Assembly: GCF_030028105.1 (NCBI RefSeq)
Contig: NC_092374.1
Span: 175,360,057 to 175,424,056 of the forward strand
Origin: Mobula birostris
Taxonomy: Eukaryota
Direction of reading: 5' to 3'
Length of the DNA stretch: 64,000 bases
The notes beneath the pieces were generated by a model. It was given only the letters and a program-made list of their open reading frames with translations, had not been told where the DNA came from and made no database searches. This document shows positions 3,277 through 41,720 of the stretch, in pieces; the stretch's first letter is position 1; every line of letters starts with the position of its first letter. A program made the translations under genes and the position numbers.

Positions 3277-3476
3277 CTTAAAAACGCAAACACGAGGAAT
3301 TCTGCAGATGCTGGAAATTCAAGCAACACACATCAAAGTTGCTGGTGAACGCAGCAGGCCAGGCAGCATCTCTAGGAAGAGATACAGTCGATGTTTCAGG
3401 CCAAGACCCTTCATCAGGACTCAGGCTTCGTCAGCAGCCTGGCCTGCTGCATTCACCAGCAACGTTGATGTGTGTG
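3277..3476 (-). mobile_element. Fold-back miniature Penelope-like insertion with 12-bp TSD
   Basis: PLE terminal sequence followed by its own partial inverted copy; flanked by GTTTGAGAGGTT at 3265-3276 and 3477-3488. Confidence 0.75.
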
Positions 3477-3893
3477 GTTTGAGAGGTTGCAGTTTTTCTG
3501 ATTGTAGTCGAGATTTTCCAGCCACCCCTTCCCCTTTCTGAATCATATATTCATATAGTTGTACAGCACGGAGACAGGCTCTTCAGCCCATTTGGCCTAT
3601 TCCATCCAACAAGCCCATCTAAACTACCGCCATTTCCCCACGTTTGGCCCATATCCTTCTCAACCTGTTGACCCATTGGAAGTGCCTCAACACTTCCTCT
3701 GGTAGCTCATTCCATGTTCGTATTATCCTTTTTGAGAAGAGATTACCCCTCAAGTCTCTTTTAAATTTCTCCCTGTACACAATAAATAAAAACTTCTTTC
3801 GTAATACTAAAGGAATTTCAATTCCAGTGTGTTTCGTACTCCTTGGGTCCCTCCCGGTCCCTCCCACCACCAATTGTTTCACTGCTATTTCTG

Positions 3894-3935
3894 CGTGGCA
3901 ACCAATGACGAAGCACAGATTAATTTTACCATTGG
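3894..3935 (+). promoter_or_regulatory. Distal X1-X2-Y-like module (candidate RFX/CREB/NF-Y enhancer)
   Basis: CGTGGCAACCAA-TGACG-..-ATTGG. TGACG (3906) to ATTGG (3931) is 25 nt, the same as in the proximal promoter (18661 to 18686). Confidence 0.5.
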
Positions 3936-3979
3936 ACAGAGCTGCGTTGTGTGCACCACTCACTGGCGATATGTTAACG

Positions 3980-4011
3980 TGCAGCTGGCCCTGTCTCCTC
4001 TAGAGGGCGCC
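3980..4011 (+). promoter_or_regulatory. Candidate CTCF site
   Basis: Core CCTCTAGAGGGCGC at 3997-4010; TGCAG 17 nt upstream at 3980, the recalled spacing of the CTCF upstream module. Confidence 0.5.
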
Positions 4012-4064
4012 TGGAACCTTGGTACTGTACCATGAAGATCGAAACCGGCCCCAAGATTTCCTTC

Positions 4065-5080
4065 CAGGAACACACAAAAAACTGGATTATCTCAGTAAAT
4101 CAGGTAGAATCTATGGAAGGGCTGAGACCCTTGATCAAGACTGGAAAAGGTAGGGGTAAGAAGCAAGAATAAGAAAGTGGAGGAATGAGAATCAGAGTCA
4201 GGTTTGTTATCACCGGCATGTGTCGTGAAATTAGATAATTTAGCTGCAGCACTTCAATGCTATACATAATATAGAAGAAAAAAAGTAAAAATAAATAAAT
4301 AAGTACATTAAACACAGTATATGTTGAATAGATTAAAAACCGTGCAAAAACAGAAATAATAAACAGTATATTAAAAAAGTGAGATAGTGTTCATGGAATC
4401 AGATGGCAGAGGGGAAGAAGCTGTTCCTGAATCACTGAGTGTGTGTCTTCAGGTATTTGCACCACCTACCTGATGGTAACAGTGAGAAAATGGCAATGAT
4501 GGTAACAATAAAAAGGTGGAGAGAGGAGATGGCATACAAGCTGGTAGGTGATAGGTGAGACCGAGTGAGAGGGAAGGTGGGAGAAGCTGGAAGAGGATAT
4601 TTGGAAGAGGCAAAGTGCTGAAGAAGCAGTTTGATAAGAGATGACAATGGAGGAAAGGAAAGGAAAAGAGATGGAGAAACAGAAGGAGGTGGTGGCCAGG
4701 TGAGAGAAGAATGGTAACCAGAATGGGGAATGGAAAAAGAGAGAAGGGGAGAGATGACCAGATGTTAGAAAAATCAATGTTCATATGCATTCAGATTGGT
4801 GGCTATGCAAACAGAGTATGAGGTTCTGTTCCTCAAACCTAAGTTTGCCCTCAGCATGGCAGTAAAGGAGGCTGTGGACAGACATGTCAAAATGGGAATG
4901 TGAAATTGAATTGAAATGGCAGATCCTGCCTATTGCAGTGGACAGGGTAAAGGTGTTCAATCTGCAGTCCAGCCTGCATCAGGTCCAACCAATGTAGAGG
5001 AGGCCACACCTGGAGCACAATAGATGACCCCTGAATGGACAGTTTGGGGCCCTCAGTGATGATAAGGAAGGAGGTAGAGG
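4065..5080 (-). mobile_element. Degenerate Penelope-like fragment (GIY-YIG C-terminus plus terminal repeat) with a nested LINE 3' end at ~4190-4480
   Basis: Purine-rich tract and the PLE ..QPDxMNIDFSN-type end on the minus strand near 4770-4900. Confidence 0.6.
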
Positions 5081-7260: not shown

Positions 7261-8069
7261 TGGCGAGCTCACAGCGGGAGTACTGTGAACTGTTCGGGTT
7301 GTTATGTAATAGGAAGTGTGTGATTGCACTGGAGAGGGTGCAGAGATCATTCACAGGATGTCTCCATTATGTAGATAGGCTGGATTAACTGGGGTTGCTT
7401 TGCTTGGAACAGAGAGGGCTGGGAGGGAGTTGAAACCAGAAAGAGATATGTGGAAATTATGAGGAATAAATATGGTAGTTAGTAGGAAATTTTTCCCAGT
7501 GCAGAAGGTTCTGTGACCATCAAGTACTTGGCACATAGCCACTTAGGTCCTGCCAATTCAAGTGCTTGCCTATATATTTCATAAATTTTGTGAAATTCTC
7601 TGCTTCCACCTCAGCCCACTACCAAACAACCAGGAAGTGTGTTACAGATTTCAATGTGATTCCAGTCACTTTTTGGTTTAAAAAAAAAAGGGCTACCCTG
7701 ATTCCCTCTAAAGTTCTTGTTCCTTGACCTATATACCTGCTGATAACCCTCGATATATACCTGCTGATCTTGGATATGCTGGTGAGGCTGTTTGCTTCCT
7801 ACACTGGGACTAGACCTCTGATGAACTCAAGCCTCAAGACCTTGAACGTGTGACAGTCTCACTGACACCAGTGGGCCAGGGATGACAGACACCCTGGCCA
7901 AGGTTGCTGCCTTTCACAGGGATTCCATTCTGTGGATTGTGTGAACTAGGGATTAATGTGTCCATTTCAGGGACAGGGTTTCCTAAAGCAGGAGTGTGTA
8001 CAATCACTGTTCTGCATCTCCCAGTCCAATGTCAAAGTTCTCTGATCATTCAGTTTGTTGTTTTAGACT

Positions 8070-8710: not shown

Positions 8711-9726
8711 TGTCACAATGGGGGCATTGGTGGCGGACCCAAATGCAGGACACAGACACTGACGTACTAGGAACAGGACTAGGGAAGTGGAGAAGAAAGG
8801 ATGCTGGACATGACACAGACCTAGGACAAGACTAGGATACAGGGCCTGGGCTAGGACTTGACTAGGATAGTGGAACCAGGACATGGAACTAGGAACTAGG
8901 AGCCTGGGTGTGGATTCCGAGCCAGAGACTGGGCAAGGACCCAGAACCTGGGTCTTGACTTGGGCTCAGATCCCAAAACCAGACAAGGACATGACGTGGC
9001 TACTGGACAGGACATGACTGGGGTCTTGAGGCTTGAGGCTGGGGTCCCTGGCGACCAGGCAAAGGCGTGACGAGGCTGGGGTCCCTGGCGACCAGGCAAA
9101 GGCGTGACGAGGCTGGGGTCCCTGGCGACCAGGCAAAGGCGTGACGAGGCTGGGGTCCCTGGCGACCAGGCAAAGGCGTGACGAGGCTGGGGTACTGCGA
9201 GGCAACTCCTGGGCAGGATGCGGGACTCCTGGGCAGGACGCAGGACTCAAACCCGACGGAGGCAAGGGACCAGAAGGGACAGAACTCACTGCAGGGTAAC
9301 AGCAAACGGCCTGCCTTACCCAACAGAGGCAAGGGACAGGAAGGGAGCTAGGTCCAGGGTGGCTCCAAGACTCGAGGCAGTCGGTAACCTCAGCAGGCTA
9401 CAGAACAGCCAAATCCATATCTCAATGACTGCATTAGCCTTCCACCGGTGGGTTGCTCCAAGGCGAGACTGACAAGGTGCAAGCGAGGGTCACAGACGAG
9501 GCGAGGCAACAGAAGGAAAGAAAGGGATTCAGACAGGGTGTTTGGACAAGAACAATCCAGCAACCAAGTCCTGGTCTCTGGAGTTATTTATGAGTCTGCC
9601 CAAACTAGAATCATGTGCCTCAATTAGAGTGCTCAACAGAAATGGGGTAAACAGGAAAACCTGGAACGAGGGTCAATGGACCGGACCGTGAACCGGAATG
9701 CGGAATTCATGGACCGGACCATGACA
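8711..9726 (-). mobile_element. Solo LTR (family A), perfect 5-bp TSD
   Basis: TGTCA...TGACA termini; CCAAG at 8706-8710 and 9727-9731; the host CR1 reads continuously when the element is removed. Confidence 0.85.
9035..9193. repeat. 37-bp minisatellite, 4 perfect copies plus 11 bp
   Basis: GAGGCTGGGGTCCCTGGCGACCAGGCAAAGGCGTGAC starting at 9035, 9072, 9109 and 9146, partial at 9183. Confidence 0.95.

Positions 9727-16706: not shown

Positions 16707-16745
<39 letters not shown>
16707..16745. repeat. (CA)n microsatellite
   Basis: Perfect AC run at the PLE terminus. Confidence 0.95.
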
Positions 16746-16832: not shown

Positions 16833-18211
16833 GAGAAGGAAGGCAGAAGATGTCAGAATAAAAAGGTGGAAGGATGGGGAGGAGGCTAGCTAGAAGGTGA
16901 AAGGTGAAGCCAGGTGGGTGGAAAAGGTGAAGGGCTGGTGAAGAAGGACTCTGATAGGAGAGGAGAGAGGACTGTAGGAGAAAGGGAAGGAGGAGGGGAC
17001 ACAGGGGGAAGTGATAGGAAGGAGAGAAGAGGTAAAAGGCCACAGTGGGGAATAGAGGAAGAGGAGAGGTGGAGGGAATTTTTTTAACTGGAAGGAGAAA
17101 TCGATATTCATGCCATCAGGTTGGAGGCTACCCAGATGGAATAAAAGTTGTTGCTCCTCCACCCTGAGGGTGGCCTCCTCTTGGCAAAGAAGGAGGCCAT
17201 GGACTGACGTGTTGGAACGGGAAATAGAATTGGAATTAAAATGTTTGGCCACCGGGAAATTCCACTTTTGGCAAATGGTGCTTGATGAAGCAGTCCCCCA
17301 ATTTATGACATGTCTCACCAATGTAGAGGAGGCCAGATTGGGAGCACCAGACACAATGGTTGCCCCCCCCCACCCCCCCGCAGATTCACAGGTGAAGTGT
17401 TGCCTCACCTGGAAGGACTGCTCGGGGCTTTGAATGGAGATGAGGGATGAGGTGATTGGGTAGGTGTAGCACTTTGGCCACATGCAGGGATAAGTGCCGG
17501 GAGGGAGGGATGAATGGAAAAGGGAATCGCATAGGGAGCGATCCAAGGGGGTGGAGAAATAAAGATATATTCAGTGATACGATCCCTTTGGAGATGGCAG
17601 AGGTTGTGGATGATGGTGTGTCAGATGCGGTGGCTCATGGGATGTTAGGTAAGGACAAGGGGAACTCTATTACTGTTAAGGTGCTGGGAAGCTGGGGTGA
17701 GCAGAGATTTTCAGGAAATGTCGAGATGCAGGTGAGCGCAGTATCAATAGTGGAGGGATGGAAATCCCATTCTTTAAGAAGGAGGGCATTTCAGATGTCC
17801 TGGAAAGGAAAGCCACATCCTGAGAACAGATGCAATGGAGGTGAAGGAAATGAGAAAAAGGAAGAGCAGTTTTACAGAGATAGGTTGGGGAGAGGGTAGA
17901 TAGAGAGTTTTTCCCAGAGTGAATTGTAGCAGTGTTTAAGAGGGATTTAGTCAGCAAATGGAGGGATACAGACCATGTGTGGGCAGATGGGTTCAGTTTA
18001 AATTGACATCACGATCAGTACAGACATGGAAGGCTGAAAGGCCTTTTCCTGTGCTGTGCTGTTCTGGTTCTCAGTGGAGAGATCAAGAGTCCAAAACCTA
18101 TAGTCAAAGTTTTCAATAGCAAAGATAGGGGAGGGTCAGGTACAGCAGAGGGAAGGGTAAAGGTTTGCCAGACCTGATGAAAAGCCTCAAACCTGATAAA
18201 TTAACCCAGTT

Positions 18212-18402
18212 AACAGGTAAAAGTTGCTGGTGAACGCAGCAGGCCAGGCTGCATCTCTAGGAAGAGGTACAGTCGACATTTCGGGTCTCGAAACGTCGAC
18301 TGTACCTCTTCCTAGAGATGCTGCCTGGCCTGCTGCGTTCACCAGCAACTTTTATGTGTGTTGCTTGAAATTCCAGCATCTGCAGATTTCCTCGTGTTTG
18401 CG
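18212..18402 (+). mobile_element. Fold-back miniature PLE insertion (~65-bp inverted arms) with 14-bp direct repeat
   Basis: Arms ~18219-18283 and ~18289-18352 are near-perfect reverse complements; AAATTAACCCAGTT at 18198-18211 and 18403-18416. Confidence 0.8.
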
Positions 18403-18648
18403 AAATTAACCCAGTTTCTCACTTATTGGTGTGGTCTGACTCACTGAACAGAGTGGATCCGTCCTCTCCTTCAACTCCGCGGTGAGAGGGTGAAGTAAAA
18501 TTATCTGCGTAGACTGTTCAATTCAACGTAGGTCAAAAGTCTCTCCTAAATGTTTCTTTTGAAGAAAGCGCCTCTTGTTGGAGCATCTCTTCCTCAACTA
18601 AAGCAAACTCAGTTTGGTGTAATTCGGAGCAAGTTGGTATGTATTCCA

Positions 18649-18692
18649 CCTGGAAACAGATGACGAGTGAGAATCTCGGCGTCTGATTGGTT
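18649..18692 (+). promoter_or_regulatory. MHC class II proximal promoter X1-X2-Y module
   Basis: X1 CCTGGAAACAGATG 18649-18662 (HLA-DRA, recalled: CCTAGCAACAGATG); X2 TGACGAG 18661-18667; Y CTGATTGGTT 18683-18692; 20 bp between X1 and Y; 150 bp upstream of the ATG. Confidence 0.9.
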
Positions 18693-18841
18693 CAGCTGCC
18701 CTCAGGCGCATATCAATAACAGACTGCACTAGAGTGAACGACTGAAGTTTGGTTTAATCGGTGGGAGAAACTGGTGGCAGATTGAGCGGAACTAGTGCTG
18801 GACGAAGAACGGTCGCGCTTGTGAGACCTGGGAGATTAAGA

Positions 18842-18908
18842 ATGGGAGCTGGGGTTTACTTCTCTGTGTTAGCGACGGCTTTAATATGTGGAGCACAGGC
18901 TACAAAAT
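18842..18908 (+). CDS. mhc2a: MHC class II alpha chain, exon 1 (signal peptide)
   Basis: MGAGVYFSVLATALICGAQATK plus T; donor GTGAGT at 18909; phase 1, completing TAC (Tyr) with exon 2. Confidence 0.9.
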
Positions 18909-19199
18909 GTGAGTTATCTGATAATAACATTTTAAATAATTTACTATTTGAACTCCCTGAAACCATTTGGCGTTATAATAGAGTATGTATTTATGTCTAT
19001 ATATGTTCTTAACCTTACAATGTTACGATAACTTTAACTTGTTTTAACAGAAAATATAGTCTGTGACAACCTATCTTCGGAATGTATCAATAATCCTAAA
19101 CCCACTGCCCGTCTATATTGACAAACTGGGAACCAAGTTTATATTTTATGTCTCAAAATCAGGGAATTTGAGACGTTGGACCTTGATCCTTCCTGGAGA

Positions 19200-21130: not shown

Positions 21131-21727
21131 GAGGACGAGGGGTGCGTGAATGAACGTGATGGGAGAAGGGGATTCGGAGGAGAGAAGAGAGCTTCACCTG
21201 TTGAGGTGTGAGGGAATTATCCCACTAGTTGGGAAGTCCAGAATCACAGAATTAGAGCAGGTCCTTCGGGATGAAGTTGGGAATCAGTTCCCGCACCAGA
21301 GTGTGGCAATATTGGAACTCTCTTCCTCGAGTGGTTATTTATGTGAGATTTTAATCTGACAGAGTCATGGAGTACTACAGTACAGAAATAGGCCCTTCGG
21401 CCCAACTAGTCCTCGCTGAACTGTTAATCTGCCCAGTCTCATTAACCTGCACCTAGTCAATTCTGATTGATGGTGTCTTGTTCGTCCATAAATTAAACAA
21501 ATAGTGCAAAAAGAGACAGAACAATGGAGGTAGTGAGGTGGTGTTCATGGTTCATTGTTCATTCAGAAATCTGACGGCGGAGGGGAAGACGTTGTTTTTA
21601 AAACATTGAGTGTGTGTCTTTAGGCTCCTGTACCTCCTCCTCGATGGTAGAAATGAGAAGGGGGCATGTCCTGGAGCAACTCTTGTTCCTCGGAAATAGA
21701 TAAAGTAACCCAAATGTGTTCTCTCGT

Positions 21728-21763
<36 letters not shown>

Positions 21764-25311: not shown

Positions 25312-25348
25312 GGCCGCTAGAGGGCGCACGGTGACCGACCGCCAATCA
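25312..25348 (+). promoter_or_regulatory. Intron-1 candidate CTCF site plus CCAAT box in a CpG-rich patch
   Basis: CCGCTAGAGGGCGC 25314-25327; CCAATCA 25342-25348. Confidence 0.45.
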
Positions 25349-29193: not shown

Positions 29194-29442
29194 ACCTACA
29201 TGAGAACCTCATGGCCTTTGTTGTCCAGGACCGCAGTCCTGACAAACAGTTCGATGTTTTGTTTGATGGCGATGAGATTTTGTACATGGACTTCAATCTG
29301 AAGAAGGAGGTGCCACGGATCCCCGAGTTTGCGAGCCATTATATGCGGGAAGGAGAGGCAGGGATCTCGGCTAATATCGCAATCTTGAAACGGAGTTTAA
29401 ATGTTTACAAGAACCTGTCACAAGGGATCCCAGAACCTAAAG
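29194..29442 (+). CDS. mhc2a: MHC class II alpha chain, exon 2 (alpha1 peptide-binding domain, 249 nt)
   Basis: Acceptor TCTTCTCTCACAG ending 29193; (Y)LHENLMAFVVQDRSPDKQFDVLFDGDEILYMDFNLKKEVPRIPEF..GISANIAILKRSLNVYKNLSQGIPEPK; donor GTGAGA at 29443; phase 1/1. Confidence 0.95.
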
Positions 29443-29894
29443 GTGAGAGAGTAGGGTATGGGGGTGGTGTCACTGAGCCCGGGGTAATGCGGGTCAGTCC
29501 GGGAACCAGCCTGGGACTGAGTGCCACTTCAACCCCTCCTTAGCCTCGGCTCCTGGCTGGTCCTTCACACAATCCAGCTGCTCTCCTTTAACCCTCGCAT
29601 TCCCCAATCCTGGGAAACACTGCAACACCCCACTAGTCTGGGCCCTTCCACAGTTCACTCACTCAGGGCCAATACCTCTTGGGTTCTGGAGAAACAAATA
29701 ACCTGCTGGAGGAACTCAGTGGGTTAAAGTTCAAAGTACATAGGCTATGTACATCCTTGAGATTTGTCTCTTTCAAGCAGCCACAAAATAAAGAAACACA
29801 ATAGAGCCCATTTAAAAAAATCTACACTACAAAGAATATCAACACCCAGTGTGCGAGAAAAGAACAAATTGTGCAAAGAGTAAAAAATAAACAA

Positions 29895-30360
29895 ATAACA
29901 CAAAACAGCACACACAAAACGCTGGAGGAACTCAGCTGGTCAGGCAGCATCTATGGCAAAGAGTTAATAGTCACTGTTTTGGGCCAAGACCCTTCATCAG
30001 GACTGAGAAAGAAGGGAGAAGCTGCCGGAATAAAGAGCTGGGGGGAGGGGAAGGAGGCTAGCTGGAAGGTGATAGGTGAACCCAGGTGGGAGGGAAAGGT
30101 CGAGGGCCGGAGAGTAAGGAATTTGATAGGAGAGGAGAGTGGACCAGAGGAGAAAGGGAAGGAGGAGGGTCCCGGGGGAAGTAACAGGCAGGTGAAAAGA
30201 GGGAAAAGCTCAGAGTGGGGAACAGAGGAAGAAGGGAAGGGGGAAATTTGTTTACTGGAGGAGAAATTGATATTCATGTCATCAGGTCGGAGGCTACTCA
30301 AGATGGAATATAAGGAGCTGCCCTCCACCCTGAGGGTGGCCTCATCTTGGCACAATAGCA
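29895..30360. mobile_element. Penelope-like fragment in intron 2 (inverted terminal repeat plus GIY-YIG end)
   Basis: ORF 29951-30448 (-) contains DEATLRVEGSSLYSILSSLRPDDMNINFS; mutated hammerhead motif at 29969-30004. Confidence 0.7.
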
Positions 30361-30837
30361 CACAGACCATGAAACGCAGAGTCCCTGAAAGTAAGTCCTC
30401 AGATATGGAGCCAGGCAGCATCTGTGGGGGGAAATGGACAATTAACATTTCAGATCGAGATCCTTTAATCTTGAGGTCGATGAGGTTGGTGGAGGAGTGT
30501 GAATAGGTGATGAGCTGTGAGGAGATGGGGGGAGTGTGAGGGGGTGACAGGGTCTGGGGAAGTGTGTGTTGGGGGGGTGATGGTGTAGATTTTACTAATG
30601 CAAGTCACTGCTGGCAAACACCTGAGACCAGATGCTGTGGCCAAGATAAACCAACCATTTCATTATCTCACCCAATGTTTGGTTGGAAATCTGAAAACAC
30701 ATTTTTGTTGTCCCCGCTGGGTTCCCATTGGGTGTGGGCTGGTCTGGGTCTCTCCGTCCTACACTCCCACCCCCACACATTAGATTTTCTGTGCCCTTTC
30801 ACCTTGGTTAACCTGTATTCACGCTGTCTGCCCACAG

Positions 30838-31119
30838 TTCCCCCTCAGACTGCCATGTACCCCGAGGAACCCGTGGAGTGGGGTCAACCCAACACTTTGA
30901 TCTGTCTGGCTGATGGATTCTATCCTCCGAGCATCAGGATGACGTGGAAACGGAACAAGAATCCTGTGACCGGTGGAGTCAACACCACAGAGTACTACCT
31001 GAAGAGCGACTCCTCCTTCCAGAGATTCTCCTACCTGAGCTTTGTGCCAAGTCCTGGAGATATGTACTCCTGCCATGTGGAGCATGAGGCTATGAAGGAG
31101 CCAAGGGTTGTCTTCTGGG
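30838..31119 (+). CDS. mhc2a: MHC class II alpha chain, exon 3 (alpha2 Ig-C1 domain, 282 nt)
   Basis: Acceptor CCCACAG ending 30837; (V)PPQTAMYPEEPVEWGQPNTLICLADGFYPPSIRMTWKRN..YSCHVEH..VVFW; two Ig cysteines, C-strand Trp, NTT sequon; donor GTTAGT at 31120. Confidence 0.97.
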
Positions 31120-32269
31120 GTTAGTATGGACCAGGTTACCAACGGGAGGTGGGAGCTGATTCCAAGGTAGTTCTAAGGTCACCTGCTCTATTAGAAAGGC
31201 CTTAGCTTTCTGTTCCAGCCATAAGCAGGTGATCCTGTGTAAATACCATGTACTCTGGGTATTTGGGGCATGGGGTGAGTACAGGTGCGTACTGTGTTGA
31301 CTGGAAAAGAAAATAAATTCCATGATGCTGGAAATCTGAAAGATCAGGGAATGCTGGAATCACTCAGCAGGTCAGGTGGCATCTGTGGGAGAGAAACCCT
31401 TCATCAGAACTTGGGAAGTGAGAAAAGAAGAATGTTAAGTTGCAGAGATGGGGCAGGATGGTGTGACCAGGGGAAGCTCCTGGTCCAGGTGATACAGTAA
31501 CTCATCGCACCCTATAATGAAAGAATGTTGGTGAATCATAGGTAATCTATCTGATGAAGTGTGAACAGATGGGCAGGAAGGAGGGCAGAAGAAAGAAACA
31601 AAATACTGAAACTATGAGATAGAGAACTGAAATACTGTAGATCTGAAATCTGAGACTCAAGCAGGGCCTGTGAAGAGGAACTGAGTTATCTTTGCCAGTT
31701 AGTGGTCTTGCATCAGAATGAAGAGGAATGCTGGTTGTCTGGAATAGCTGAATTAATTGCTGAGTGATGATAGCAGCAATGTGACTTAGATTTTTACGCT
31801 GAGGCTTCAGTGGATCAGTGTGGGAAATCAGAGTGGGAGTGGAATGGAAAATTAAAGTAATTGGAGGATTTGGGCCACCCTATGGACTGAAAGAGATTTT
31901 CTGTACAATAGTCAGCCAGACTGTGTTTGGCTTCTCCAATGTAAAATCATAAGGTTTAGGAATAGGTCATAGGAGGCAGTCGTCAATCCCAGGGGATCAT
32001 AAAAAACAGAACATAGAGACATAGAAAACCTACAGCACAATACAGGCCCTTCGGCCCACAAAGCTGTGCCAAACATGTCCTTGCCTTAGAAATTACCGAG
32101 GCTTACCCATAGCCCTCTATTTTTCTAAGCTCCATGTACCTATCCAGGAGTCTCTTAAAAGACCCTATCGTTTCCGTCTCCACCACCGCCGCCAGCAGCC
32201 CATTCCACACACTCACCACTCTCTGCGTAAAAAACTTACCCTGACATCTCCACTGTATCTAATCATGGG

Positions 32270-32840
32270 TTTGCATGTGTCGTGGATGGTGTCCTCTCCA
32301 GGGCGCAAGCCTGGGTGGGAAGATTTGAAGAACCGGCTGTTGCCCATGCAGTGAGTTCCATCTCTCCACATCACTGATGTAGTCCAAGGGAAGGGCAAGC
32401 ATTGATAGAGCTTGTCACCAGTGTCGTCACAGAGGTTGCCAGAGTGAAGTTGTAAACAACATCAAACTGCCTTAGGGACCCCAGCTCCAGATTTCTTCCT
32501 CCAGGTTTACTCCTGAAGCCTTTCCCATGAGTGGGTATGGCCGCAAGGCAGTGGAGGGTTAAAATCTGAGTTTTCCTTCTCTTAGGTGGGCTGCCGTCCA
32601 AGGCTGATGAGCCCTACCTGCCTGAAACAACTGGTTTTGAGGTGTCAGTGGTCTGCCTTTGCCTCTTCTCTTGTCAGTAGAAACAGTTCTGTTGGGTCTA
32701 GTAGCTATGCCACACGTGAAGGCCAAGGGTTGGATTCGGTTGTCAGAGGCTGTTAGAGTCGCACGCCATTTGGAGCACTTTATAGGTAGTGGGAGCTTAT
32801 CCCCACTACCACCCCGGCTATGACTACCTTAGGAACCTCA
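32270..32840 (-). mobile_element. Interspersed repeat, tentatively an RTE-like LINE 5' region
   Basis: Resembles recalled RTE-type leaders (GGGGATAAGCTCCCACTACC..GGCCTTCACGTGTGGC); no diagnostic ORF found. Confidence 0.3.
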
Positions 32841-35800
32841 GGAGCAGGTAAAGACCTACTGAACCTAATTTTCACAACACGGGAAGAGGCCATCAGTCTA
32901 TCAGGTCACTGCCAGCTCCCAGCAGAGGAAATCCAGTAACCCTGATCTCATTCCCTCTCACAGCCAAAGAGTCATAGACACTACAGCAGTCTTAGGGATG
33001 TGGGAAGAAAATGGACCTTCACGGGGAAATCCACAGTCACAGGGAGAATACAGAAACACCGCACCTACAGCACCGGAGTTTGGGATCTGCAAACTGTCCA
33101 GAGGCACCAATTTAGGACAGGCATCAAATCAGAGCGAGGGTCAGAGAACGAAGTCTCCACCTGGCCTGTGGGGCAAATGGTTACTCACTATCAGAGAAAG
33201 ACCTAGATAGCAGAGTGGGATGGTGGGCTTACAGGACAACTTATCAGCCGTCTTTGGGAGAACATAGAACATAGAAATCCACAGCGCATTACAGACCCTT
33301 CGGCCCACACTGTCGTGCTGTTCATGTAACTTACTCTAGAAACTGTCTAGAATTTCCCTACTACATAGCCTTCTAGTTTTCTAAGCTCCGTGTACCTACC
33401 TAAGAGACTCTTAAAAGACCCTGTTGTATCCGCTTCCACTACCATCGCTGGCAGTGCATTCCACGCACCCACCACCCTCTGTATGAAAAATTTACCTCTA
33501 ATATCCCCCTTGTACCGACTTCCAAGCACCTTAAGCCTGTGCCCTCTTGTGGCAACCATTTCAGCCCTGGGAAAAAGCCTCTGACTATCCACACGATCAA
33601 TGACTCTCATCATCTTATACACCTCTATCAGGTCACCTCTCATCCTCCGTCACTCCAAGGAGAAAGGGCCGAGTTCACTCAACCTATTCTCATAAGGCAT
33701 GCTCCCCAATCCAGGCAACATCCTTGTAAATCTCCTAAATCCTTCCTGTAATGAGGTGACGAGATCTGAACACAGTACTCCAAGTGGGGTTTGCCCAAAG
33801 TCTTATATAACTGTGACATTACCTCACGGCTCTTGAACTCAATCCTCTGGTTGATGAGCCTTCTTAACAACATTCCCTCTGAGGACTGAGGGTGGGAAGG
33901 ACAGTGAGGCTGAGTGGAGGGAAGGAGGGGGAGGTGTGACAGTTACTCTAAATTTCCAGCATCTGCAGAATCCATTGTATATAAAATGAAAACCTTATGT
34001 TATTCACCTGGACTGGGAATATAGTGTCAGTGGCCTTGGGTGATGGTACAGTTGGTTTCACACCACAGTACTGGTACTTGAGTGCCTTCAGCCGCTTGGA
34101 GTGTGAAGTCAGATGTACTTTCTGAGGGCAGCAAGGGCTGAGGACAGGTAATTTGAAGAGGGGGGACTTCAATCAGGTCCACTGCCGAAGGATAAAAGGC
34201 AGAAGTAGTTTACAAGAGTGTAATAGAGCTTTGATCGGCAGCCAATCAGCATTTGGGGCTCATTAGTAAGAGCAAATTAAAGGAAGGCAGGGGCAAACAC
34301 AGTGGCTGTGGTCTGAGTGAGCATAGTCAGAGTGGTGATCTCAAGGCTTTAGCTCTTCGAGGCTTCACTCAGAGAAAGGAAAGGAAAGAAAAGCTCAATT
34401 TTTTTTTCATTCTCTTCTTTATATCTGCTCAGCTGTGACAATAGGGATGCCAGGCAGGATAGTGAGACGCTCCTCTTGCGGGATGTGGGAAGGAATGGAG
34501 ATCGCCAGTATCCCTGATGACTACAACTGTGAGAAGTGCATCCAGCTGCAGCTTCTAACAATCCGGAGTTGGGATTGGAAGAACTCCAGATCATTCGGGA
34601 GAATGAAGGGTGATAGATAGGACACAGAGAGAGGTAGTTACACCCAAGGTGCAGGATGCAGGAAACTGAGCGACAGTTAGCAAGGGGAAAGGGGTAAAGG
34701 TTCCAATGCAGAGTACCCCTGTGGTCATCCCCCTCAATAACAGCAATATCACTTTTCATACTGTCAGGGCAGATGACCTAACAGAGGAAAGACACAGTGA
34801 TCGGGTCTCTGGCACTGAGTCTGTCTCTGTGACTCTGAAGAGAAGGAGTGAGAAGAGGCACAATGATGTGATAGGGGATTCATTATTCAGGGGAATGGAC
34901 GGGCCGTTCTGTGGGTGAGAACGAGATTCCTGTATGATATGTTGCCTCTGGGGTTTCAGGGTCCGGGATATTTTGGACTGAGTCCTCAGCATTCTTAAGT
35001 GGGAGGGTGAACAGCCAGAAATCCTGGTCCATGTAGGTACCAATGACCTGGATAGAACAAGTGATGAGGTTCCGCATAGGGATTTCAGGGAGATAGGTGA
35101 TAAATTAAAGGGCAGGACCTCCAAAGTTGTGATCTCAGGATTGCTACCCATGCCATGTGCTAATGAATCTAGAACTAGAAAGATTATACAGTTTAATATG
35201 TGGCTAAGGAGTTGGTGTAGGAGGAAGGGCATAAGATTTTTGGATCATTGGGCTCTCTTCCAGGGAAGGTGGGATCTGTACGGAATGGACGGTTTGCACC
35301 TGAACTGGAGGGGACTAATATCCTAGCGGGAAGGTTTGTTAATGTTGCATGGTGGGGTTTAATCTAGAGTTGCAGGGGATGGGGACCAGAGTGCCAGAAC
35401 AGTTAGCGGAGAGTTTGTGAAGGCAGATGTTGGTAAGACCTCAGGCAAAGTCAGGGATAAAAAGGTTGAGCACAGTTTGACAAGTGCCCTGGGCTCCCTA
35501 TATTTCAATGCAAGAAGTTCCGTAGGAAAGGTGGATAATAGTGCTGAAGATGAGATAGCTGGTTTACAAACAGAGGCGATGTGTAGTGAGGAGGGGCTGT
35601 TGATAGGGCAAAATTGCAGTCAACAGGATGAGTTACAATGTAAAAGGCGGACAAAAGCGAAAAGGGTGAATTCAGGACTGAAGGTGTTGTATCTGATTGC
35701 GTGCAGTATATGGAATATGGTAGATAAACTTGTAGCACAGTTGCAGATTGGCAGGAATGATGTTGTAGGCATCACTGAATCGTGGCTGAAAGATTACTGT

Positions 35801-36290
35801 ATACTGTAGCTGGGAGCTTAATGTCCAAGGATACACATTGTATCAAAAGGTTAGGCAGGAAGGCAGAGCGGGTGGTGTTGCTATGTTGCTAAAAAATGAA
35901 ATCAAATGATTAGAAAGAGATGACAGAGGGTGGGAAGTTGTTGAATCATTGTGGATAGAGCTAAGGAACTGCAAAGGGAGTTGTATACAGACCCCCAAAC
36001 AGTAGTAAGGATGTGGCCTACAAATTACAATGGGAGACAGAAAATGCATGTCAAAAGGGCAATGTTAGAATAGTCATGGGGGATTTCAATATGCAGATAG
36101 ATTGGGAAAATCAGGTTGGTGCTGCATTCCAGGAGTGGGAGTTTCTAGAGTGCCTAGGGATGGAATTTTAGAGCATCATGTGGTTGGGCTCCCTACAGGA
36201 TCAGTTATTCTGGATTGGGTATTGTGCAATGAACCAAAATTGATTACAGAGCCTAAGGTAAAAGAACCCTTGAGGAAAGAGATCATAATA

Positions 36291-36939
36291 TGAAGGGTGA
36301 TTGATAAGTTCGTGGCCTAAGGTAGAAGGAGTCAATTTTAGAGAACCTAGCACATTTATTTTTCAACATCGTCCCCTCTTACATTTGCACACTTAGTCCA
36401 GCGGTCGTGGAGCATATGGATCTTGGACCTCCAGAAAGGGTTCACAGCAGGGGAGACTGATAAGTTCGTGGCCTAAGGTAGAAGGAGATGTGTTAACCAC
36501 AGGAATTCTGCAGATGCTGGAAATTCAAGCAACACACATCAAAGTTGCTGGTGAACGCAGCAGGCCAGGCAGCATCTCTAGGAAGAGGTGCAGTCGACGT
36601 TTCAGGCCGAGACCCTTCGTCAGGACTAACTGAAGGAAGAGTGAGTAAGAGATTTGAAAGTGGGAGGGGGAGGGGGAGATCCAAAATGATAGGAGAAGAC
36701 AGGAGCTCTTGTTACATGCACATGCAAGTCAACTCTTTGAGTGATTATGCAGAAAGTTTGAAGCTAATAACTCATCAGGGGTGATTGATAGGTTCGTGGC
36801 CTAAGGTAGAAGGAGGTGAGTTATTAACTTCAAACTTTCTCCATAATCACTCAAAGGGTTGACCTGCATGAGCATGTAATCAGAGCTGTATAACTCATTT
36901 CCTTCTACCTTAGGCCACGAACTTATCAATCACCCCTTG
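36291..36939. mobile_element. Tc1/mariner-type non-autonomous element (MITE), 40-bp TIRs, TA TSD
   Basis: TIRs 36291-36330 and 36900-36939 match at 37/40; TA at 36289-36290 and 36940-36941; the host CR1 rejoins as GATCATAA-TA-TGATCAAATTC. Confidence 0.8.
36592..36627 (-). ncRNA. Minimal type I hammerhead ribozyme motif, intact core
   Basis: Minus strand AGTC-CTGACGA-AGGGTCTCGGCCT-GAAAC-GTC-GACT: stem I AGTC/GACT, CUGANGA and GAAA core, palindromic ACGT in place of stem III, GUC triplet. Confidence 0.65.
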
Positions 36940-37999
36940 TATGATCAAATTCACCCTGAAATTTGAGAAGGAGAAGCTAAAATCAGATGTATCAGTATTA
37001 CAATGGGGTAAAGGGAATTACAGAGACATGAGAGAGGGGTTGGCCAGAGTTGATTGGAAAAGAACACTGGCAAGGATGATGTCAGAGCAGCAATGGCTGT
37101 AATTCCTGGAAGTAGTTCAGAAGGCACAGGATATATAAATCCCAAAGAGGAAGAAGTAGGTGTACAAGATGATGAGAGGCATTAATCTTGTGGATAGTCA
37201 GAGGCTTTTCTCCAGGGCTGAAATGGCTAACATGAGAGGGCACAGTTTTAAGGTGCTTGGAAGTAGGTACAGAGGAGATGTAGGGGTAGGTTTTTTACGC
37301 AGAGAGTGGTGAGTGCGTGGAATGGGCTACTGGCGGTGGTGGAGACGGAAACGATAGAGCCTTTTAAGAGACTCCTGAATAGGTACATGAAGCTTAGAAA
37401 AATAGAAGGCTATGGGTAAGCCTAGGTAATTTCTAAGGTAAGGACATGTTCAGCACAGCTTTGTGGGCCATAGGGCCTGTATTGTGCTTTAGGTTTTCTA
37501 TGTTCCATGTTCTAAGTACTCTGAAGAAAATAAGACCATAAGACCATTAGATATAGGAGCAGAAGTAGGCCATTCAGCCCATCGAGTCTGCTCCACCATT
37601 CAATCATGGGCTGATCCGATTCTTCCAGTCATCCCCACTCCCATGCTTTCACCCCATACCCTTTGATGCCCTGGCTAATCAAGAACCTGTCTGTCTCTGC
37701 CTTAAATACACCCAATGACTTGGCCTCCACAGCTGCTCATGGCAACAAATTCCACAGACTTACCACCGTCTAACTAAAGTAATTTCTCCACATCTCAGTT
37801 CTAAAAGGACATCCCTCAATCCTGAAGTCATGCCCTCTTGTCCTAGGATCCCATACCCTGGGAAATAACTTTGCCATATCTATTCTTTTCAGGCCTTTTA
37901 ACATTCAGAATGTTTCTATGAGATCCCCCCCTCATTCTCCTGACCACCAGGGAATACAGCCCATGAGCTGCCAGATGTTCCTCATACGGTAACCCTTTC

Positions 38000-38501
38000 A
38001 TAGTCATAGTCATACTTTATTGATCCCGAGGGAAATTGGTTTTTGTTACAGTTGCACAATAAATAAATAAATAGTAATAAAACCATAAATAATTAAATGG
38101 TAATATGTAAATTATGCCAGTAAATTATGAAATAAGTCCAGGACCAGCCTATTGGCTCAGGGTGTCTAACCCTCCAAGGGAGGAGTTGTAAAGTTTGATG
38201 GCCACAGACAGGAATGACTTCCTATGACGCTCCGTGTTGCATCTCGGTGGAATGAGTCTGTGGCTGAATGTACTCCTGTGCCCAACCAGTACATTATGTG
38301 GTGGATGGGAGACATTGACCAAGATGGCATGCAACTTGGACAGCATCCTCTTTTCAGACACCACCATCAGAGAGTCCAGTTCCATCCCCACAACATCACT
38401 GGCCTTCCGAATGAGTTTGTTGATTCTGTTGGTGTCTGCTACCCTCAGCCTGTTGCCCTAGCACACAACAGCAAACATGATCGCACTGGCCACCACAGAC
38501 T
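38000..38501 (-). mobile_element. Rex1/Babar 3' fragment nested in a CR1 fragment
   Basis: ORF 38149-38391 matches the C-terminus of 2377-3087; (GTCATA)n tail at 38000. Confidence 0.85.
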
Positions 38502-41500
38502 CATTCCTAGAATCATTTTTGTGAATCTTCTCTGAACCCTCTCTAGAATCAGTATATCCTTGCTAAAATAAGGAGCCAAAAACTGCACACAATACTCCAA
38601 GTGTGGTCTCACAAGTGCCTTATAAGAGCCTCAACATCACATCCCTACTCTTATATTCTATACCTCTAGAAATGAATGCCAACATTGCATTCACCTTCTT
38701 CACAACCGACTCAACCTGGAGGTTAACCTTTGGTGTATCTTGCACAAAGATTCCAAGTCTCTTTGCATTTCTGCATTTTGAATTCTCTCCCCATCTAAAT
38801 AATAGTCTGCCTATTTATTTCTTCCACCAAAGTGCATGACCAAACACTTTCCAACATTGTACTTCATTTGCCACTTCTTTGCCGATTCCCCTAAACTATC
38901 TAAGTCTCTCTGCAGCCTTTCTGTTTCCTCAACATTACCCGCTCCTCCACCTGTCTTTGTATCATTGGCAAATTTAGCCACAAATCCATTAATACTGTAG
39001 TTCAAATCATTGACATACATCGTAAAAAGCAGCAGTCGCAACACCGGCCATGATACAACCATGGCTAACAAGAAAAGTCAAAGCCAACATAAAAGCCAAA
39101 GAGAGAGCATATAATAGAGCAAAGATTCTTGGGAAGTTAGAAGATTGGGAAGCTTCTAAAAACCAACAGAAGGCAACTAAAAATACATTAAGAAGGTAAA
39201 GATGGAATAAGAAAGTAAGCTAGCTAATAATGTTAAAGAGGATACCAAAAGTTTCTTCAGATTTATATAGTGTAAAAGGGAGGCGAGAGTGGATATTGGA
39301 CTGCTGGAAAATAATGCTGGAGAGGTAGTACTGGGGGACAATGAAATAGTGGGTGCACTGAATATGTATTTTGCATCAGTTTCACTGTAGAAGACACTAG
39401 CAGTATGCTGGGAGTTCCAGGTATAAGGGGGCATGAAGTGTGTGAAGTTGCCATAACTAGAGAGAACGTTCTTGGGAAGCTTAAAAGTCTGAAGGTGGTT
39501 AGATCACCTGAACTGGATGGAAGTCACCCCAGAGTTCTGAAAGAGGTGGCTGAAGAGATTGTTGAGGCATTACTAATGATCTTTCAAGATTCACTAGATT
39601 CTGGAATGATTCCGGAAGAATGGAAAATTGCAAATGTCACTCTACTCTTCAAGAAGGGAGAGAGGCAGAAGAAAGGAAATTATAGGCTAATTAGTCTGAC
39701 CTCAGTGGTTGGAAAGATGTTGGAGTCGATTGTTAAGGATGAGATCTCAGGGTACTTGGAGATACATGATAAAATATGCTGTAGTCAGCAGGGTTTCTTC
39801 AAGGGAAAATCTTGCCTGACAAATCTGTTGGGATTCTTTGAAGAAATAACAAGCAGGATAGACAAAGGAAAATCAATTGATGTTGTGTACTTGGATTTTC
39901 AGATGGCCTTTGACAAGGTGCCGCACATGAGGCTGCTATAAGCTATGAAGGTATTACATGGTATTACAGGAAAAATTCTAGCATGGATAAAGCAGTGGCT
40001 GATTGGCAGGAGGCAAAGAGTGAGAATAAAGGGAGCCTTTTCTGGCTGGCTGCCGGTGACTAGTGGTGTTCCACAGAGGTCTGTGTTGGGACCGATTCTT
40101 TTCATGTGATAGTCAATGATTTGGATGATAGAATTGATGGCTTTGTTGCAAAATTTGCAGATGATATGAAGGTAGTTAGAGGGCAAGTAGTTTTCAGGGA
40201 GTAGAGAGGCTACAGAGGACTTAGACAGATTAGAAGATTGGACAAAGAAATGGCAGACGGAATTCAGTGTTAGGAAGTGTGTGGTCATGCACTTTCGTAG
40301 AAGAAATCAAAGGGCTGACTATTTTCTAAATGGAGAGAAGATACATAAAACTGAGGTGCAAAAGGACTTCGGAGTCCTTGTGCTGGGTTCCCTAAAGGTT
40401 AATTTGCAGGTTGAGTCTGTGGTGAGGAAAGCAAATGCAATGTGAGCATTCATTTCAAGAGGACTAGAATATAAAAGCAGGAATGTAATGTTGAGACTTT
40501 ATAAAGCACTGGTGAGGCCTCACTAGGAGTATTATGAGCAGTTTTGGGCTCTTTATCTTTGAAAGGATGTGCTGAAACTGGAGAGGGTTCAAAGGGTTTC
40601 ATGAAATTGCTTCCAGGATTGAATGGCTTGTCATATGAAGAGTATTTGATGGCTCTGGGCCTGTTTTCACCAGAATTCAGAAGAATGAAGCATGACCTCA
40701 TTGAAACCTATCAAATGGTGAAATGCCTTGATAGAGAGGATGTGAAGAGGATGTTTCCTCTGGTAGGAGAGTCTAAGACCAGCGGACACAGCTTCAGAAT
40801 AGAGGGGCATCCATTTAGAACGGAATTTGAGAAGGAATTTCTTCAGCAAGAGAGTGGTGATCTGTGGAATTCTTTGCCACAGGCAGCTGTGGAGGCCTAG
40901 TCATTATGCATATTTAAGGCAGAGGTTGATAGATTCTTGATTGATCCGGGTTGAAGGGATCACGGGAGAAGGCAGGAGATTTGGGCTGAGAGGAAAATTG
41001 GATCAGCTATGATGAAATGTTGGAGCTGACTAGATGGGCCAAATGGACTAATTCTGCACCTATATCTATGGTCTTATATAAGGAGTTCTGTATCAGGATG
41101 GGATTGGAAGCTGGAAACAGTTTGAATAATTTTTGAGCTAACTATACAGATGATTGAAGAGGAAGGGTGTGGGACATGCAGAGTACTACTTTCCACTTGC
41201 TGAGACAATAGGAATGCTAAGTGTTTACTATTTTGTATCTGTGAGTCTTTCGCTTAACCAGTTCTGTCTCTTTTGATATCTTAGGGAGCGGAACTGTGTG
41301 ATCTCTGTCCCTTTAACATCTTTTCTACAATATTTACACACTACCGCAAGTATGGGTCTACCAATATCTCGTATCATTCCAGCTGCGGGCCTTGAGTAGA
41401 CCATAGACCACAGGCTCACTGATGTGTGTGGACAGGGGTTTGCCAGTGTTGGGGAGGGGTGTTAGTGTTGGGCCATGCTCTCCTTCAGCAAGGTAAGTTT

Positions 41501-41574
41501 GGTGAATGAACACTCACTGTGTGTCCACTGTATGTTTCACTGTGAGCTCTCACCCTTCAGTTGTCTCTCCCTAG

Positions 41575-41720
41575 AACCTGAGGTACCTGAGGAAGCTTCC
41601 GGCCCAGGAACCGTGATCTGTGCACTGGGACTCTCCCTGGGAATCATCAGTGCCGTGGTTGGAATCATCCTACTGATCAAAGAGAGGCAGCGTCTGCAGG
41701 CTCAGCAGCAGGGCATCTAG
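41575..41720 (+). CDS. mhc2a: MHC class II alpha chain, exon 4 (connecting peptide, TM, cytoplasmic tail, stop)
   Basis: Acceptor TTGTCTCTCCCTAG ending 41574; (E)PEVPEEASGPGTVICALGLSLGIISAVVGIILLIKERQRLQAQQQGI*; class II alpha TM pattern C-x2-G-x3-G-x2-S-x3-G; donor GTGAGT at 41723, two nt after the stop. Confidence 0.95.

What the first reader, a model, noticed from the sequence alone, without database searches (positions are those of the whole stretch)
3894..3935. Second X1-X2-Y module 14.8 kb upstream with exactly the promoter's spacing
Seen: CGTGGCAACCAA-TGACGAAGCACAGATTAATTTTACC-ATTGG aligns without gaps to the promoter CCTGGAAACAGA-TGACGAGTGAGAATCTCGGCGTCTG-ATTGG. It matches 8 of 12 in X1, TGACG is identical, and the distance to ATTGG is 25 nt in both, while the spacer is unrelated. 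Conservation confined to the boxes suggests function rather than duplication. Established: mammalian class II loci use distal S'-Y'/X-like modules bound by RFX, CREB, NF-Y and CIITA. Inference: a distal class II enhancer in a cartilaginous fish, or the orphan promoter of a lost or neighbouring class II gene.
Basis: partly seen in the sequence, partly recalled or inferred. Interest (0 to 1): 0.75.

Follow-up and report, generated by a model that had tools for sequence, protein, structure and literature searches.

The report
Unconserved look-alike of class II promoter boxes
A 42-base stretch 14.8 kb upstream of a manta ray MHC class II alpha gene repeats the promoter's three core binding motifs at the same spacing. 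That is rarer than chance predicts, but nothing else about it resembles the class II control modules conserved in sharks and rays, so it is an untested candidate and not a demonstrated enhancer.

Summary
Window 3894-3935 matches the promoter module at 18649-18690 in 8 of 12 X1 bases, shares TGACGA, and has ATTGG 25 nt after the X2 start. The spacer is unrelated.

The window is Mobula birostris. The 18649 module is the promoter of an annotated class II alpha gene and is conserved in sawfish, skate, sevengill shark and whale shark.

Evidence for function:
- The core grammar (RFX half-site, N3, TGA[CT]G, N18-20, ATTGG) is expected 0.0004 to 0.008 times per shuffled window.
- In 349 kb of elasmobranch class II alpha loci it otherwise hits only four promoters and one conserved distal element.

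Evidence against:
- Profile HMMs of the promoters and of the distal element never find site 1.
- Matrices trained on other species rank it 22nd to 90th in the window.
- It mismatches most positions that nine conserved modules share outside the cores.
- It has no S box, no exon after it and no detectable homology to any module.
- None of its sampled 31-mers occurs in other organisms' runs.

Close relatives, reads and chromatin data could not be examined.

Verdict: a real motif arrangement of unresolved function. I put about 0.45 on a non-functional look-alike and 0.3 on a lineage-specific distal enhancer. The orphan-promoter reading is not supported.

The parts
3894..3905 (+). X1-like box CGTGGCAACCAA. 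The RFX half-site core GGCAAC is at 3897-3902.
   Evidence: 8 of 12 identical to promoter X1. The core fits [AG]G[ACT]AAC as in all nine conserved modules. Positions 2, 10 and 11 differ from bases invariant or nearly invariant in those modules.
3906..3912 (+). X2-like box TGACGAA (half-CRE TGACG)
   Evidence: TGACGA is identical to the manta promoter. Other elasmobranch promoters have TGATGRG or TGCCGCG at this place.
3931..3935 (+). Y-like core ATTGG (inverted CCAAT), 25 nt after the X2 start and 37 nt after the X1 start
   Evidence: The same X1-to-Y distance (36-37 nt) occurs in five elasmobranch promoters. The flanks ACC/AC differ from the conserved [CGT]T[GCT]ATTGG-N-Y pattern.
3902..3906 (+). 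Forward CCAAT box (AACCAATGA) overlapping the X1/X2 junction. A further forward CCAAT lies at 3870-3874.
   Evidence: Read. This makes three CCAAT/ATTGG pentamers in 66 nt. None of the nine conserved modules has a CCAAT at the X1/X2 junction.
3799..4065 (.). Island of about 270 bp, unique within the window, that carries site 1. CpG observed/expected is 0.64.
   Evidence: No other copy in the window or in other elasmobranch loci. No protein homologs for its ORFs. No tRNA or Rfam match. CpG o/e is in the top 7% of 200-nt windows, against 0.75-0.92 at the true promoter.
3586..3798 (-). Decayed LINE 3' tail (FKRDLRGNLF...WNELPEEV) bordering the island
   Evidence: tblastn against LINE ORFs of the window, E 2e-6 to 9e-6. 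The exhaustive protein search matches only residues 56-105 of the ORF.
4066..4190 (+). Diverged copy of the dispersed SINE/mini-Penelope-like repeat that borders the island downstream
   Evidence: blastn gives 73-77% identity to copies at 16739, 16810, 25710, 29910 and 43388. The repeat families are listed.
18616..18724 (+). True proximal promoter of the class II alpha gene: S-like GGTGTAATTCGG 18616-18627, X1 18649-18660, X2 18661-18667, Y ATTGG 18686-18690, conserved downstream box 18708-18724
   Evidence: An nhmmer profile of four other species finds 18613-18726 at E 2.5e-21. blastn matches Pristis, Rhinoraja, Heptranchias and Rhincodon.
18842..18908 (+). Leader exon (MGAGVYFSVLATALICGAQATK, phase 1) of the class II alpha gene
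   Evidence: 100% identical to NCBI Mobula birostris protein P0001. The ATG lies 156 nt after the Y box.
29194..41720 (+). Remaining exons of the class II alpha gene: alpha1 29194-29442, alpha2 30838-31119, TM/cytoplasmic about 41572-41720
   Evidence: The called gene range is 22,879 bp.

Best explanation
Site 1 is a stand-alone cluster of three short motifs: an RFX-type half-site, a half-CRE and an inverted CCAAT. They sit in the order and spacing used by class II promoters. The cluster lies in a 270-bp unique island between a decayed LINE tail and a SINE-like repeat.

It is not a copy, relic or ortholog of the class II alpha promoter, nor of the distal element conserved in other elasmobranchs. 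Most likely it arose fortuitously and is not a dedicated, selectively maintained class II enhancer.

Shown: the motif match, the repeat context, the lack of homology and the lack of a downstream exon. Inferred: the absence of function.
For: - Profile HMMs of five proximal promoters and of four distal elements find the true promoter (E 7e-38 and 0.024). They never find site 1, even when only 3700-4200 is searched.
- Matrices trained on modules of other species give site 1 6.7-8.4 bits, rank 22 to 90 of 128,000 window positions. The promoter scores 27-38 bits, and the Pristis and whale shark distal modules score about 31 bits.
- Outside the three cores, site 1 agrees with only 2 of 9 positions that are invariant or nearly invariant in the nine conserved modules (table).
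- Global alignment of the 250-nt surroundings to any module is no better than shuffles (z -0.7 to 1.9). True orthologs give z 10-13.
- No S-like block is present.
- The identical TGACG is a manta-specific variant of an X2 box that reads TGATGRG or TGCCGCG in the other four promoters.
- The X1/X2 junction is itself a canonical CCAAT box, so part of the X1 match can be read as a different motif.
- Unweighted box identity of 19 of 27 recurs twice elsewhere in the window.
- None of the 4 sampled 31-mers across the module occurs in runs of other organisms.
- Three small runs of this species, guessed to be RNA, hold none of the island's words.
Against: - The exact core grammar is rare: 0 of 1500 shuffles and 0.0004-0.008 expected per shuffled window.
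- In 349 kb of real elasmobranch class II alpha loci, every other hit is a conserved proximal or distal module. There is no background hit.
- Site 1 is upstream of the gene and on the gene's strand.
- Its X1-to-Y distance is the 36-37 nt conserved in the five elasmobranch promoters examined.
- Its GGCAAC core is the one found in a skate distal module, and the human DRA X box has AGCAAC at that place.
- CpG retention is mildly elevated.
- Distal S-Y enhancers are established in mammals (PMC1802633), so the prior for one here is not small.
Confidence: 0.45

Rival explanations
1. Lineage-specific distal class II enhancer. RFX binds GGCAAC, a CREB/ATF-type factor binds TGACG and NF-Y binds ATTGG, on the same helical register as at the promoter. 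CIITA is recruited, and the complex loops to the alpha promoter 14.8 kb away, and perhaps to the beta promoter noted beyond the window's end. It would have arisen independently of the promoter and of the older distal element.
For: - Core grammar and spacing are perfect and rare.
- It lies on the same strand as the gene and upstream of it.
- It sits in non-repeat DNA.
- CpG o/e is 0.64 against a window median of 0.24.
- Distal X-Y modules lie 2-8 kb upstream of class II alpha in sawfish, skate and whale shark.
- Mammalian distal S-Y modules bound by RFX and CIITA are documented (PMC1802633).
Against: - No S box is present.
- It mismatches flank positions conserved in the nine elasmobranch modules.
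- Its profile and matrix scores are low.
- A forward CCAAT overlapping X1/X2 could compete with RFX and X2 factors.
- No conservation has been shown.
- In the human work, low-scoring candidates were mostly not taken further.
Confidence: 0.3
2. Generic NF-Y/CRE element unrelated to class II, for example a cryptic or transposon-derived promoter. It would have three CCAAT boxes (3870, 3902, 3931) and a half-CRE, and its resemblance to X1-X2-Y would be incidental.
For: - Three CCAAT/ATTGG pentamers lie within 66 nt, with spacings of 32 and 29 nt, and AACCAATGA is a good NF-Y site.
- The island lies among transposon fragments.
- Part of the island shares 31-mers with three other organisms, including very small runs, which hints at a multi-copy or conserved piece.
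Against: - Clusters of three CCAAT in 70 nt are expected about twice per window by my own Poisson estimate from the counts.
- No transcript contigs were found in three small runs guessed to be RNA.
- No other copy exists in the window or in the other loci.
- The module's own sampled words are not shared with other organisms.
Confidence: 0.12
3. Relic of a true module: either the orphan promoter of a lost class II gene, or the decayed manta ortholog of the ancient distal element (X-Y plus NF-kB plus TTTCACTT plus TATA) found in sawfish, skate and whale shark.
For: - Position and strand (upstream, + strand) are as in sawfish and skate.
- The conserved distal element is otherwise missing from the whole manta window.
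- TGACG is shared with the two skate distal copies, and the GGCAAC core with one of them.
Against: - No residual similarity outside the cores.
- No NF-kB site in the window's upstream part.
- No leader exon, no class II alpha-like exon and no Pfam domain downstream.
- Neutral decay should have hit the cores as much as the flanks.
Confidence: 0.08
4. Part of a dispersed repeat family that happens to carry these motifs, lying near the class II gene by accident.
For: - The window is repeat-rich.
- The island is flanked by transposon fragments.
- Some island words occur in low-coverage runs of other organisms.
Against: - No second copy in 64 kb of window or 285 kb of other loci.
- No protein homologs in 1.84 billion representatives for the island part of the ORF.
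- No hit for the + strand ORF.
- The module's sampled words occur only in the source organism.
Confidence: 0.05

Closest known systems
Mammalian distal S-Y (S'-Y') enhancers of the MHC class II locus and the Ii gene (DRA upstream enhancer, modules #2, #4, #6, #8, Ii S'-Y'; Krawczyk et al. 2004 as cited in PMC1802633)
   Same: An X1-X2-Y core order and spacing like the promoter's, lying kilobases from a class II promoter. [quoted passage not shown]
   Different: The mammalian modules were picked by a full S-Y profile and validated by RFX and CIITA ChIP. Site 1 has no recognisable S box, scores poorly with full-length profiles, and has no binding or conservation data.
Proximal S-X-X2-Y promoter module of MHC class II genes (here: manta 18616-18724 and its orthologs in Pristis, Rhinoraja, Heptranchias and Rhincodon)
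   Same: RFX half-site, three bases, TGA[CT]G, then ATTGG 23-25 nt on. The X1-to-Y distance is 37 nt.
   Different: Site 1 lacks the S-like GGTGAAATTCAG, the TTTCA prefix, CC at X1 positions 1-2, WG at positions 10-11, the T two bases before ATTGG, and the downstream CATGTCAATTACAGA box. No exon follows it.
Conserved elasmobranch distal element found here (Pristis L004:1413-1807, Rhinoraja L003:1586-1973 and 7411-7851, Rhincodon L005:5308-4927)
   Same: Lies upstream of class II alpha and carries an X1-X2-Y module with a true RGYAAC core. In the two batoids it is on the + strand.
   Different: That element also has a second ATTGG, GGGACTTTCC, TTTCACTT(CC) and a TATA-like box. It is recognisably homologous across sawfish, skate and whale shark. 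Site 1 has none of these and no homology to it.

Membership tests
MHC class II S-X-X2-Y enhanceosome module | X1 box: RFX site with RGYAAC-type core in a CCYRGNAACWG context | tested here: inconclusive
   The core GGCAAC is present at the right offset. Positions 2, 10 and 11 differ from bases invariant or nearly invariant in nine elasmobranch modules and from the human DRA X box (probe sequence in PMC4806502).
MHC class II S-X-X2-Y enhanceosome module | X2 box (CRE-like) directly abutting X1 | tested here: met
   TGACGAA at 3906-3912, sharing six bases with the manta promoter. X2 varies among elasmobranch promoters.
MHC class II S-X-X2-Y enhanceosome module | Y box (inverted CCAAT) at fixed distance and orientation from X | tested here: met
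   ATTGG lies 25 nt from the X2 start and 37 nt from the X1 start. Five promoters have 36-37 nt. The flanking bases do not match the conserved pattern.
MHC class II S-X-X2-Y enhanceosome module | S box upstream of X1 | tested here: not met
   No block resembling the conserved GGTGAAATTCAG or the distal elements' upstream block. nhmmer gives no hit, even on the island alone.
MHC class II S-X-X2-Y enhanceosome module | Recognised by a full-length profile of known modules | tested here: not met
   nhmmer finds no hit up to E 100 in the window or E 1000 in the island. Matrix scores are 6.7-9.6 bits, within the window's background.
MHC class II S-X-X2-Y enhanceosome module | Conserved in orthologous loci | tested here: inconclusive
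   No counterpart in the 10-kb upstream flanks of sawfish, skate, sevengill or whale shark. The module's sampled 31-mers are absent from other organisms' runs.
MHC class II S-X-X2-Y enhanceosome module | Cooperative binding of RFX, CREB and NF-Y, with CIITA-dependent activity | not testable with these tools
   Needs ChIP or CUT&RUN, EMSA and reporter assays.
Orphan promoter of a class II gene | Signal-peptide exon and class II exons downstream on the same strand | tested here: not met
   The only ATG after the site (4043) runs into a SINE-like repeat. tblastn with five alpha chains finds exons only from 18842 on. Ten + strand ORFs between 5.1 and 17.9 kb have no Pfam domain. A beta-chain query was not available.
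Dispersed repeat family | Multiple similar copies | tested here: inconclusive
   No copy in the window or in 285 kb of other loci. No protein-level relatives.

The most novel reading that the evidence does not exclude
Site 1 is an independently evolved distal X1-X2-Y enhancer of the manta class II alpha (and perhaps beta) gene. It would be bound by RFX, a CREB/ATF factor, NF-Y and CIITA. Together with the older distal X-Y/NF-kB element seen in sawfish, skate and whale shark, it would show that long-range S-Y control of class II genes was already in use in cartilaginous fish and can be rebuilt from scratch by motif birth.
Probability: 0.3. Interest if true: 0.55.

Novelty: new member of a known kind. 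Interest (0 to 1): 0.3.

Why it matters
If bound and active, this would be one of the first candidate distal class II enhancers outside tetrapods. It would date enhanceosome-type long-range control of antigen-presentation genes to the base of jawed vertebrates.

If it is a look-alike, it is a useful warning. Perfect core motifs at perfect spacing next to the right gene can still lack every other mark of the conserved modules.

The comparative by-products are on firmer ground and could guide experiments. These are a class II alpha promoter conserved across sharks and rays with a fixed X-to-Y distance, and a conserved distal X-Y/NF-kB/TATA element in three other species.

Tried and rejected
No read depth, RNA starts or cross-species contig layout could be obtained.
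- Both run searches are used. The island shares a few words with organisms B, C and D, but not within 3874-3955. Only 4 words were sampled there, so this is weak evidence.
- The look-up of encoding contigs gave no DNA for Mobula, Hemitrygon, Hemiscyllium or Heterodontus. One look-up timed out and was repeated.
- Apparent collinear blocks between the manta and sawfish upstream regions turned out to be transposon ORFs, so no synteny anchor was obtained.
- The exhaustive protein search with the minus-strand ORF found only LINE tails and one spurious tandem-repeat protein, P0028.
- The plus-strand ORF had no hits.
- tRNA, Rfam and bacterial promoter scans found nothing relevant.
- Findings look-ups by sequence and by motif words were blank.
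- A segmental duplication of transposon plus module was rejected. The same mini-Penelope family lies 240-420 nt upstream of both modules, but the DNA in between is unrelated.
- L006, the second skate alpha-like gene, has a mis-called start inside a transposon and no module.
- One paper said to hold the DRA X box could not be used because its stored text lacked the sequence.

Full report
**What is there.** Site 1 reads CGTGGCAACCAA TGACGAA gcacagattaattttacc ATTGG at window 3894-3935, + strand. The reference module reads CCTGGAAACAGA TGACGAG tgagaatctcggcgtctg ATTGG at 18649-18690. X1 matches at 8 of 12 positions, TGACGA is identical, TGACG to ATTGG is 25 nt in both, and the sequence in between is unrelated. 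The two sites are 14,755 bp apart.

**The reference module is a real class II promoter.**
- The ATG at 18842 opens a 22-codon signal-peptide exon in phase 1.
- Together with exons at 29194-29442, 30838-31119 and about 41572-41720, it encodes exactly the NCBI protein [quoted passage not shown] (P0001).
- I fetched the orthologous loci of Heptranchias perlo (L002), Rhinoraja longicauda (L003), Pristis pectinata (L004) and Rhincodon typus (L005).
- All have the leader exon, a long first intron and an alignable proximal promoter.
- The promoter consists of an S-like GGTGAAATTCAG, TTTCA plus X1 CCTGGAAACAG, a variable X2, GTGATTGG, and a further conserved block CATGTCAATTACAGA.
- X2 reads TGATGRG in three species, TGCCGCG in the skate and TGACGAG only in manta.
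- The distance from X1 start to ATTGG is 36-37 nt in all five. From memory it is also 37 nt in human HLA-DRA. The DRA X1-X2 sequence CCTAGCAACAGATGCGTCA is confirmed by a probe listed in PMC4806502.

**Surroundings of site 1.**
- It lies in an island of about 270 bp (3799-4065) that has no other copy in the window.
- Upstream is a decayed LINE tail on the minus strand (3586-3798).
- Downstream, from about 4066, is a diverged copy of the abundant SINE/mini-Penelope-like repeat.
- The only ATG after the site (4043) does not encode a signal peptide and runs into that repeat.
- No class II alpha-like exon lies between 3.9 and 18.6 kb.
- Ten + strand ORFs in that interval have no Pfam domain.
- NCBI-derived gene calls list nothing within 10 kb upstream of the alpha gene.
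- The orphan-promoter reading is therefore not supported.
- CpG observed/expected over the island is 0.64. The window median is 0.24, the island is in the top 7%, and the true promoter has 0.75-0.92. This is a weak hint of reduced methylation or younger age.

**Is it more than chance?** The answer depends on the statistic.
- Unweighted identity is unremarkable. A match of 23 of 42 is expected about 4.6 times per window and occurs 7 times. Box identity of 19 of 27 is also reached at 40726(+) and 2202(-), where the matches are scattered.
- The exact cores are rare. No site with at least 8 of 12 in X1 plus TGACG plus ATTGG at 25 nt appeared in 1500 dinucleotide shuffles.
- I also derived a core grammar from the other species' modules: [AG]G[ACT]AAC, N3, TGA[CT]G, N18-20, ATTGG. 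It is expected 0.0004 times per shuffled window, and 0.007-0.008 in looser forms.
- In 349 kb of real sequence (the window plus six loci, both strands), that grammar hits only four proximal promoters, the sawfish distal element and site 1.
- Allowing for the freedom a reader has in calling something "a second module", I put the chance rate at roughly 0.5-5% per class II window.

**Does it look like the family beyond the cores?** No.
- Profile HMMs built from the five promoters, or from the four non-manta ones, find 18604-18741 at E 7e-38 and 2.5e-21. They do not report site 1 up to E 100. They also give no hit when only 3700-4200 is searched.
- Matrices trained on modules of other species give site 1 6.7-8.4 bits, rank 22-90 of about 128,000 window positions. 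The promoter scores 27-38 bits.
- With all nine modules in the training set, site 1 scores 9.6 bits, inside the background range of every locus.
- Nine non-core positions are invariant or nearly invariant in the nine conserved modules. These are the CA just before X1, C and Y at X1 positions 2-3, WG at positions 10-11, T two bases before ATTGG, and Y two bases after it. Site 1 agrees at only 2 of the 9. The human DRA X box has the same CCT and AG at X1 positions 1-3 and 10-11.
- Caveat: these small matrices cap every position at about 2 bits. They therefore under-weight core mismatches, and the background positions that outrank site 1 in the hit lists lack an ATTGG. The matrix ranking is evidence against family resemblance, not proof of non-function.
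- Global alignment of 250 nt around site 1 to any of the nine modules is no better than shuffles (z -0.7 to 1.9). True orthologs give z 10-13.

**A finding from the comparison.** Matrix scans revealed second modules upstream of class II alpha in other species.
- They lie at L004:1471 (+) in sawfish, L003:7468 and 1645 (+) in skate, and L005:5254 (-) in whale shark.
- They are homologous to each other. Pristis and Rhinoraja share about 76% identity over 120-nt stretches, and nhmmer E-values run from 1e-56 to 1e-79.
- Besides X1-X2-Y, they carry GGGACTTTCC (an NF-kB site); all but skate copy B carry TTTCACTT (its reverse, GGAAGTGAAA in sawfish and skate copy A, is Ets-IRF-like); the sawfish copy also has a second ATTGG, and the sawfish and whale shark copies a TATA-like box.
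- The profile of these elements picks the proximal promoters as its next-best hits, at E 0.024 for manta. It finds nothing else in the manta window, and no near-exact GGGACTTTCC occurs upstream of the gene.
- So distal X-Y modules do exist in elasmobranch class II alpha loci, which raises the prior for one in manta. But site 1 is not that element, and nothing links the two beyond the cores.

**Repeat membership and conservation.**
- No copy of the island exists in the window or in 285 kb of other loci.
- The island part of the minus-strand ORF has no homolog among 1.84 billion representative proteins. Only the LINE tail matches, and P0028 is a spurious tandem-repeat hit.
- The plus-strand ORF finds nothing. 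tRNA and Rfam scans are empty.
- Public runs of three other organisms hold 2-3 of the 28 sampled 31-mers of 3780-4070. They hold none of the 4 sampled words of 3874-3955. This is weak evidence that the module itself is not strongly conserved or repeated, and it leaves an unexplained shared piece elsewhere in the island.
I worked beside those places and sent none of their letters to any search tool.

**Weighing.** The chance hypothesis has a small likelihood under a core-only test and a comfortable one under full-profile tests. Established knowledge (PMC1802633) bears on this.
- Distal S-Y enhancers exist and conform to a full profile.
- Low-scoring candidates mostly were not taken further.
- The X box is the most critical element.

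Site 1 has a good X core, correct order and correct spacing. It has no S box and deviates at the flanking positions conserved across the nine elasmobranch modules. I therefore assign these probabilities:

| Reading | Probability |
|---|---|
| Non-functional look-alike | about 0.45 |
| Lineage-specific distal enhancer | 0.30 |
| Generic NF-Y/CRE element | 0.12 |
| Relic of a true module | 0.08 |
| Repeat-borne motif | 0.05 |

**Novelty and score.** If real, site 1 would be a new member of a known kind, the distal S-Y enhancers of class II loci, in a new lineage. I found no paper in the held library on shark or ray class II promoters. Interest is modest at 0.3, because function is untested and the sequence evidence is split.

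Noticed in passing
L004:1413-1807 (+); L003:1586-1973 and 7411-7851 (+); L005:5308-4927 (-): A conserved distal element lies 2-8 kb upstream of class II alpha in sawfish, skate (two copies with decayed Y boxes) and whale shark (inverted). All copies carry an X1-X2-Y module and NF-kB GGGACTTTCC; most also carry TTTCACTT(CC). The sawfish copy has a second ATTGG, and the sawfish and whale shark copies a TATA-like box. No conserved exon follows it. It is absent from the manta window and from the sevengill 10-kb flank.
   Followed up: partly
window 18616-18724; L002:9760-9900; L003:9770-9910; L004:9715-9860; L005:9770-9905: The class II alpha proximal promoter is alignable across rays and sharks. 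It has S-like GGTGAAATTCAG, TTTCA plus CCTGGAAACAG, a variable X2, GTGATTGG and a downstream CATGTCAATTACAGA box. The X1-to-Y distance is fixed at 36-37 nt. The sawfish promoter carries a duplicated Y-to-downstream-box segment.
   Followed up: partly
window 3277-3476 and 18211-18409: Copies of the same fold-back mini-Penelope-type repeat lie 420 nt and 240 nt upstream of site 1 and of the true promoter. The DNA between repeat and module is unrelated, so this is not a segmental duplication. The family has nine copies in the window.
   Followed up: partly
window 3780-3873 or 3956-4070: A few sampled 31-mers of the island are held by runs of three other organisms, two of them very small runs. The words across the module itself are not. 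Which piece is shared, and whether it is conserved or multi-copy, is unknown.
   Followed up: partly
window 18909-29193; L002-L005 first introns: The first intron of class II alpha is 8-17 kb in all five species (10.3 kb in manta). In manta it is full of repeats.
   Followed up: no
window 8998-9219: A tandem array of a 37-nt unit (GAGGCTGGGGTCCCTGGCGACCAGGCAAAGGCGTGAC), about six copies, three of them identical.
   Followed up: no
L006:10001: The annotated start of the second skate alpha-like gene (P0005, 266 aa, C1-set only) lies inside transposon-like sequence with no promoter module. It is probably a mis-called first exon.
   Followed up: no
They were left out of all later searches.
   Followed up: no
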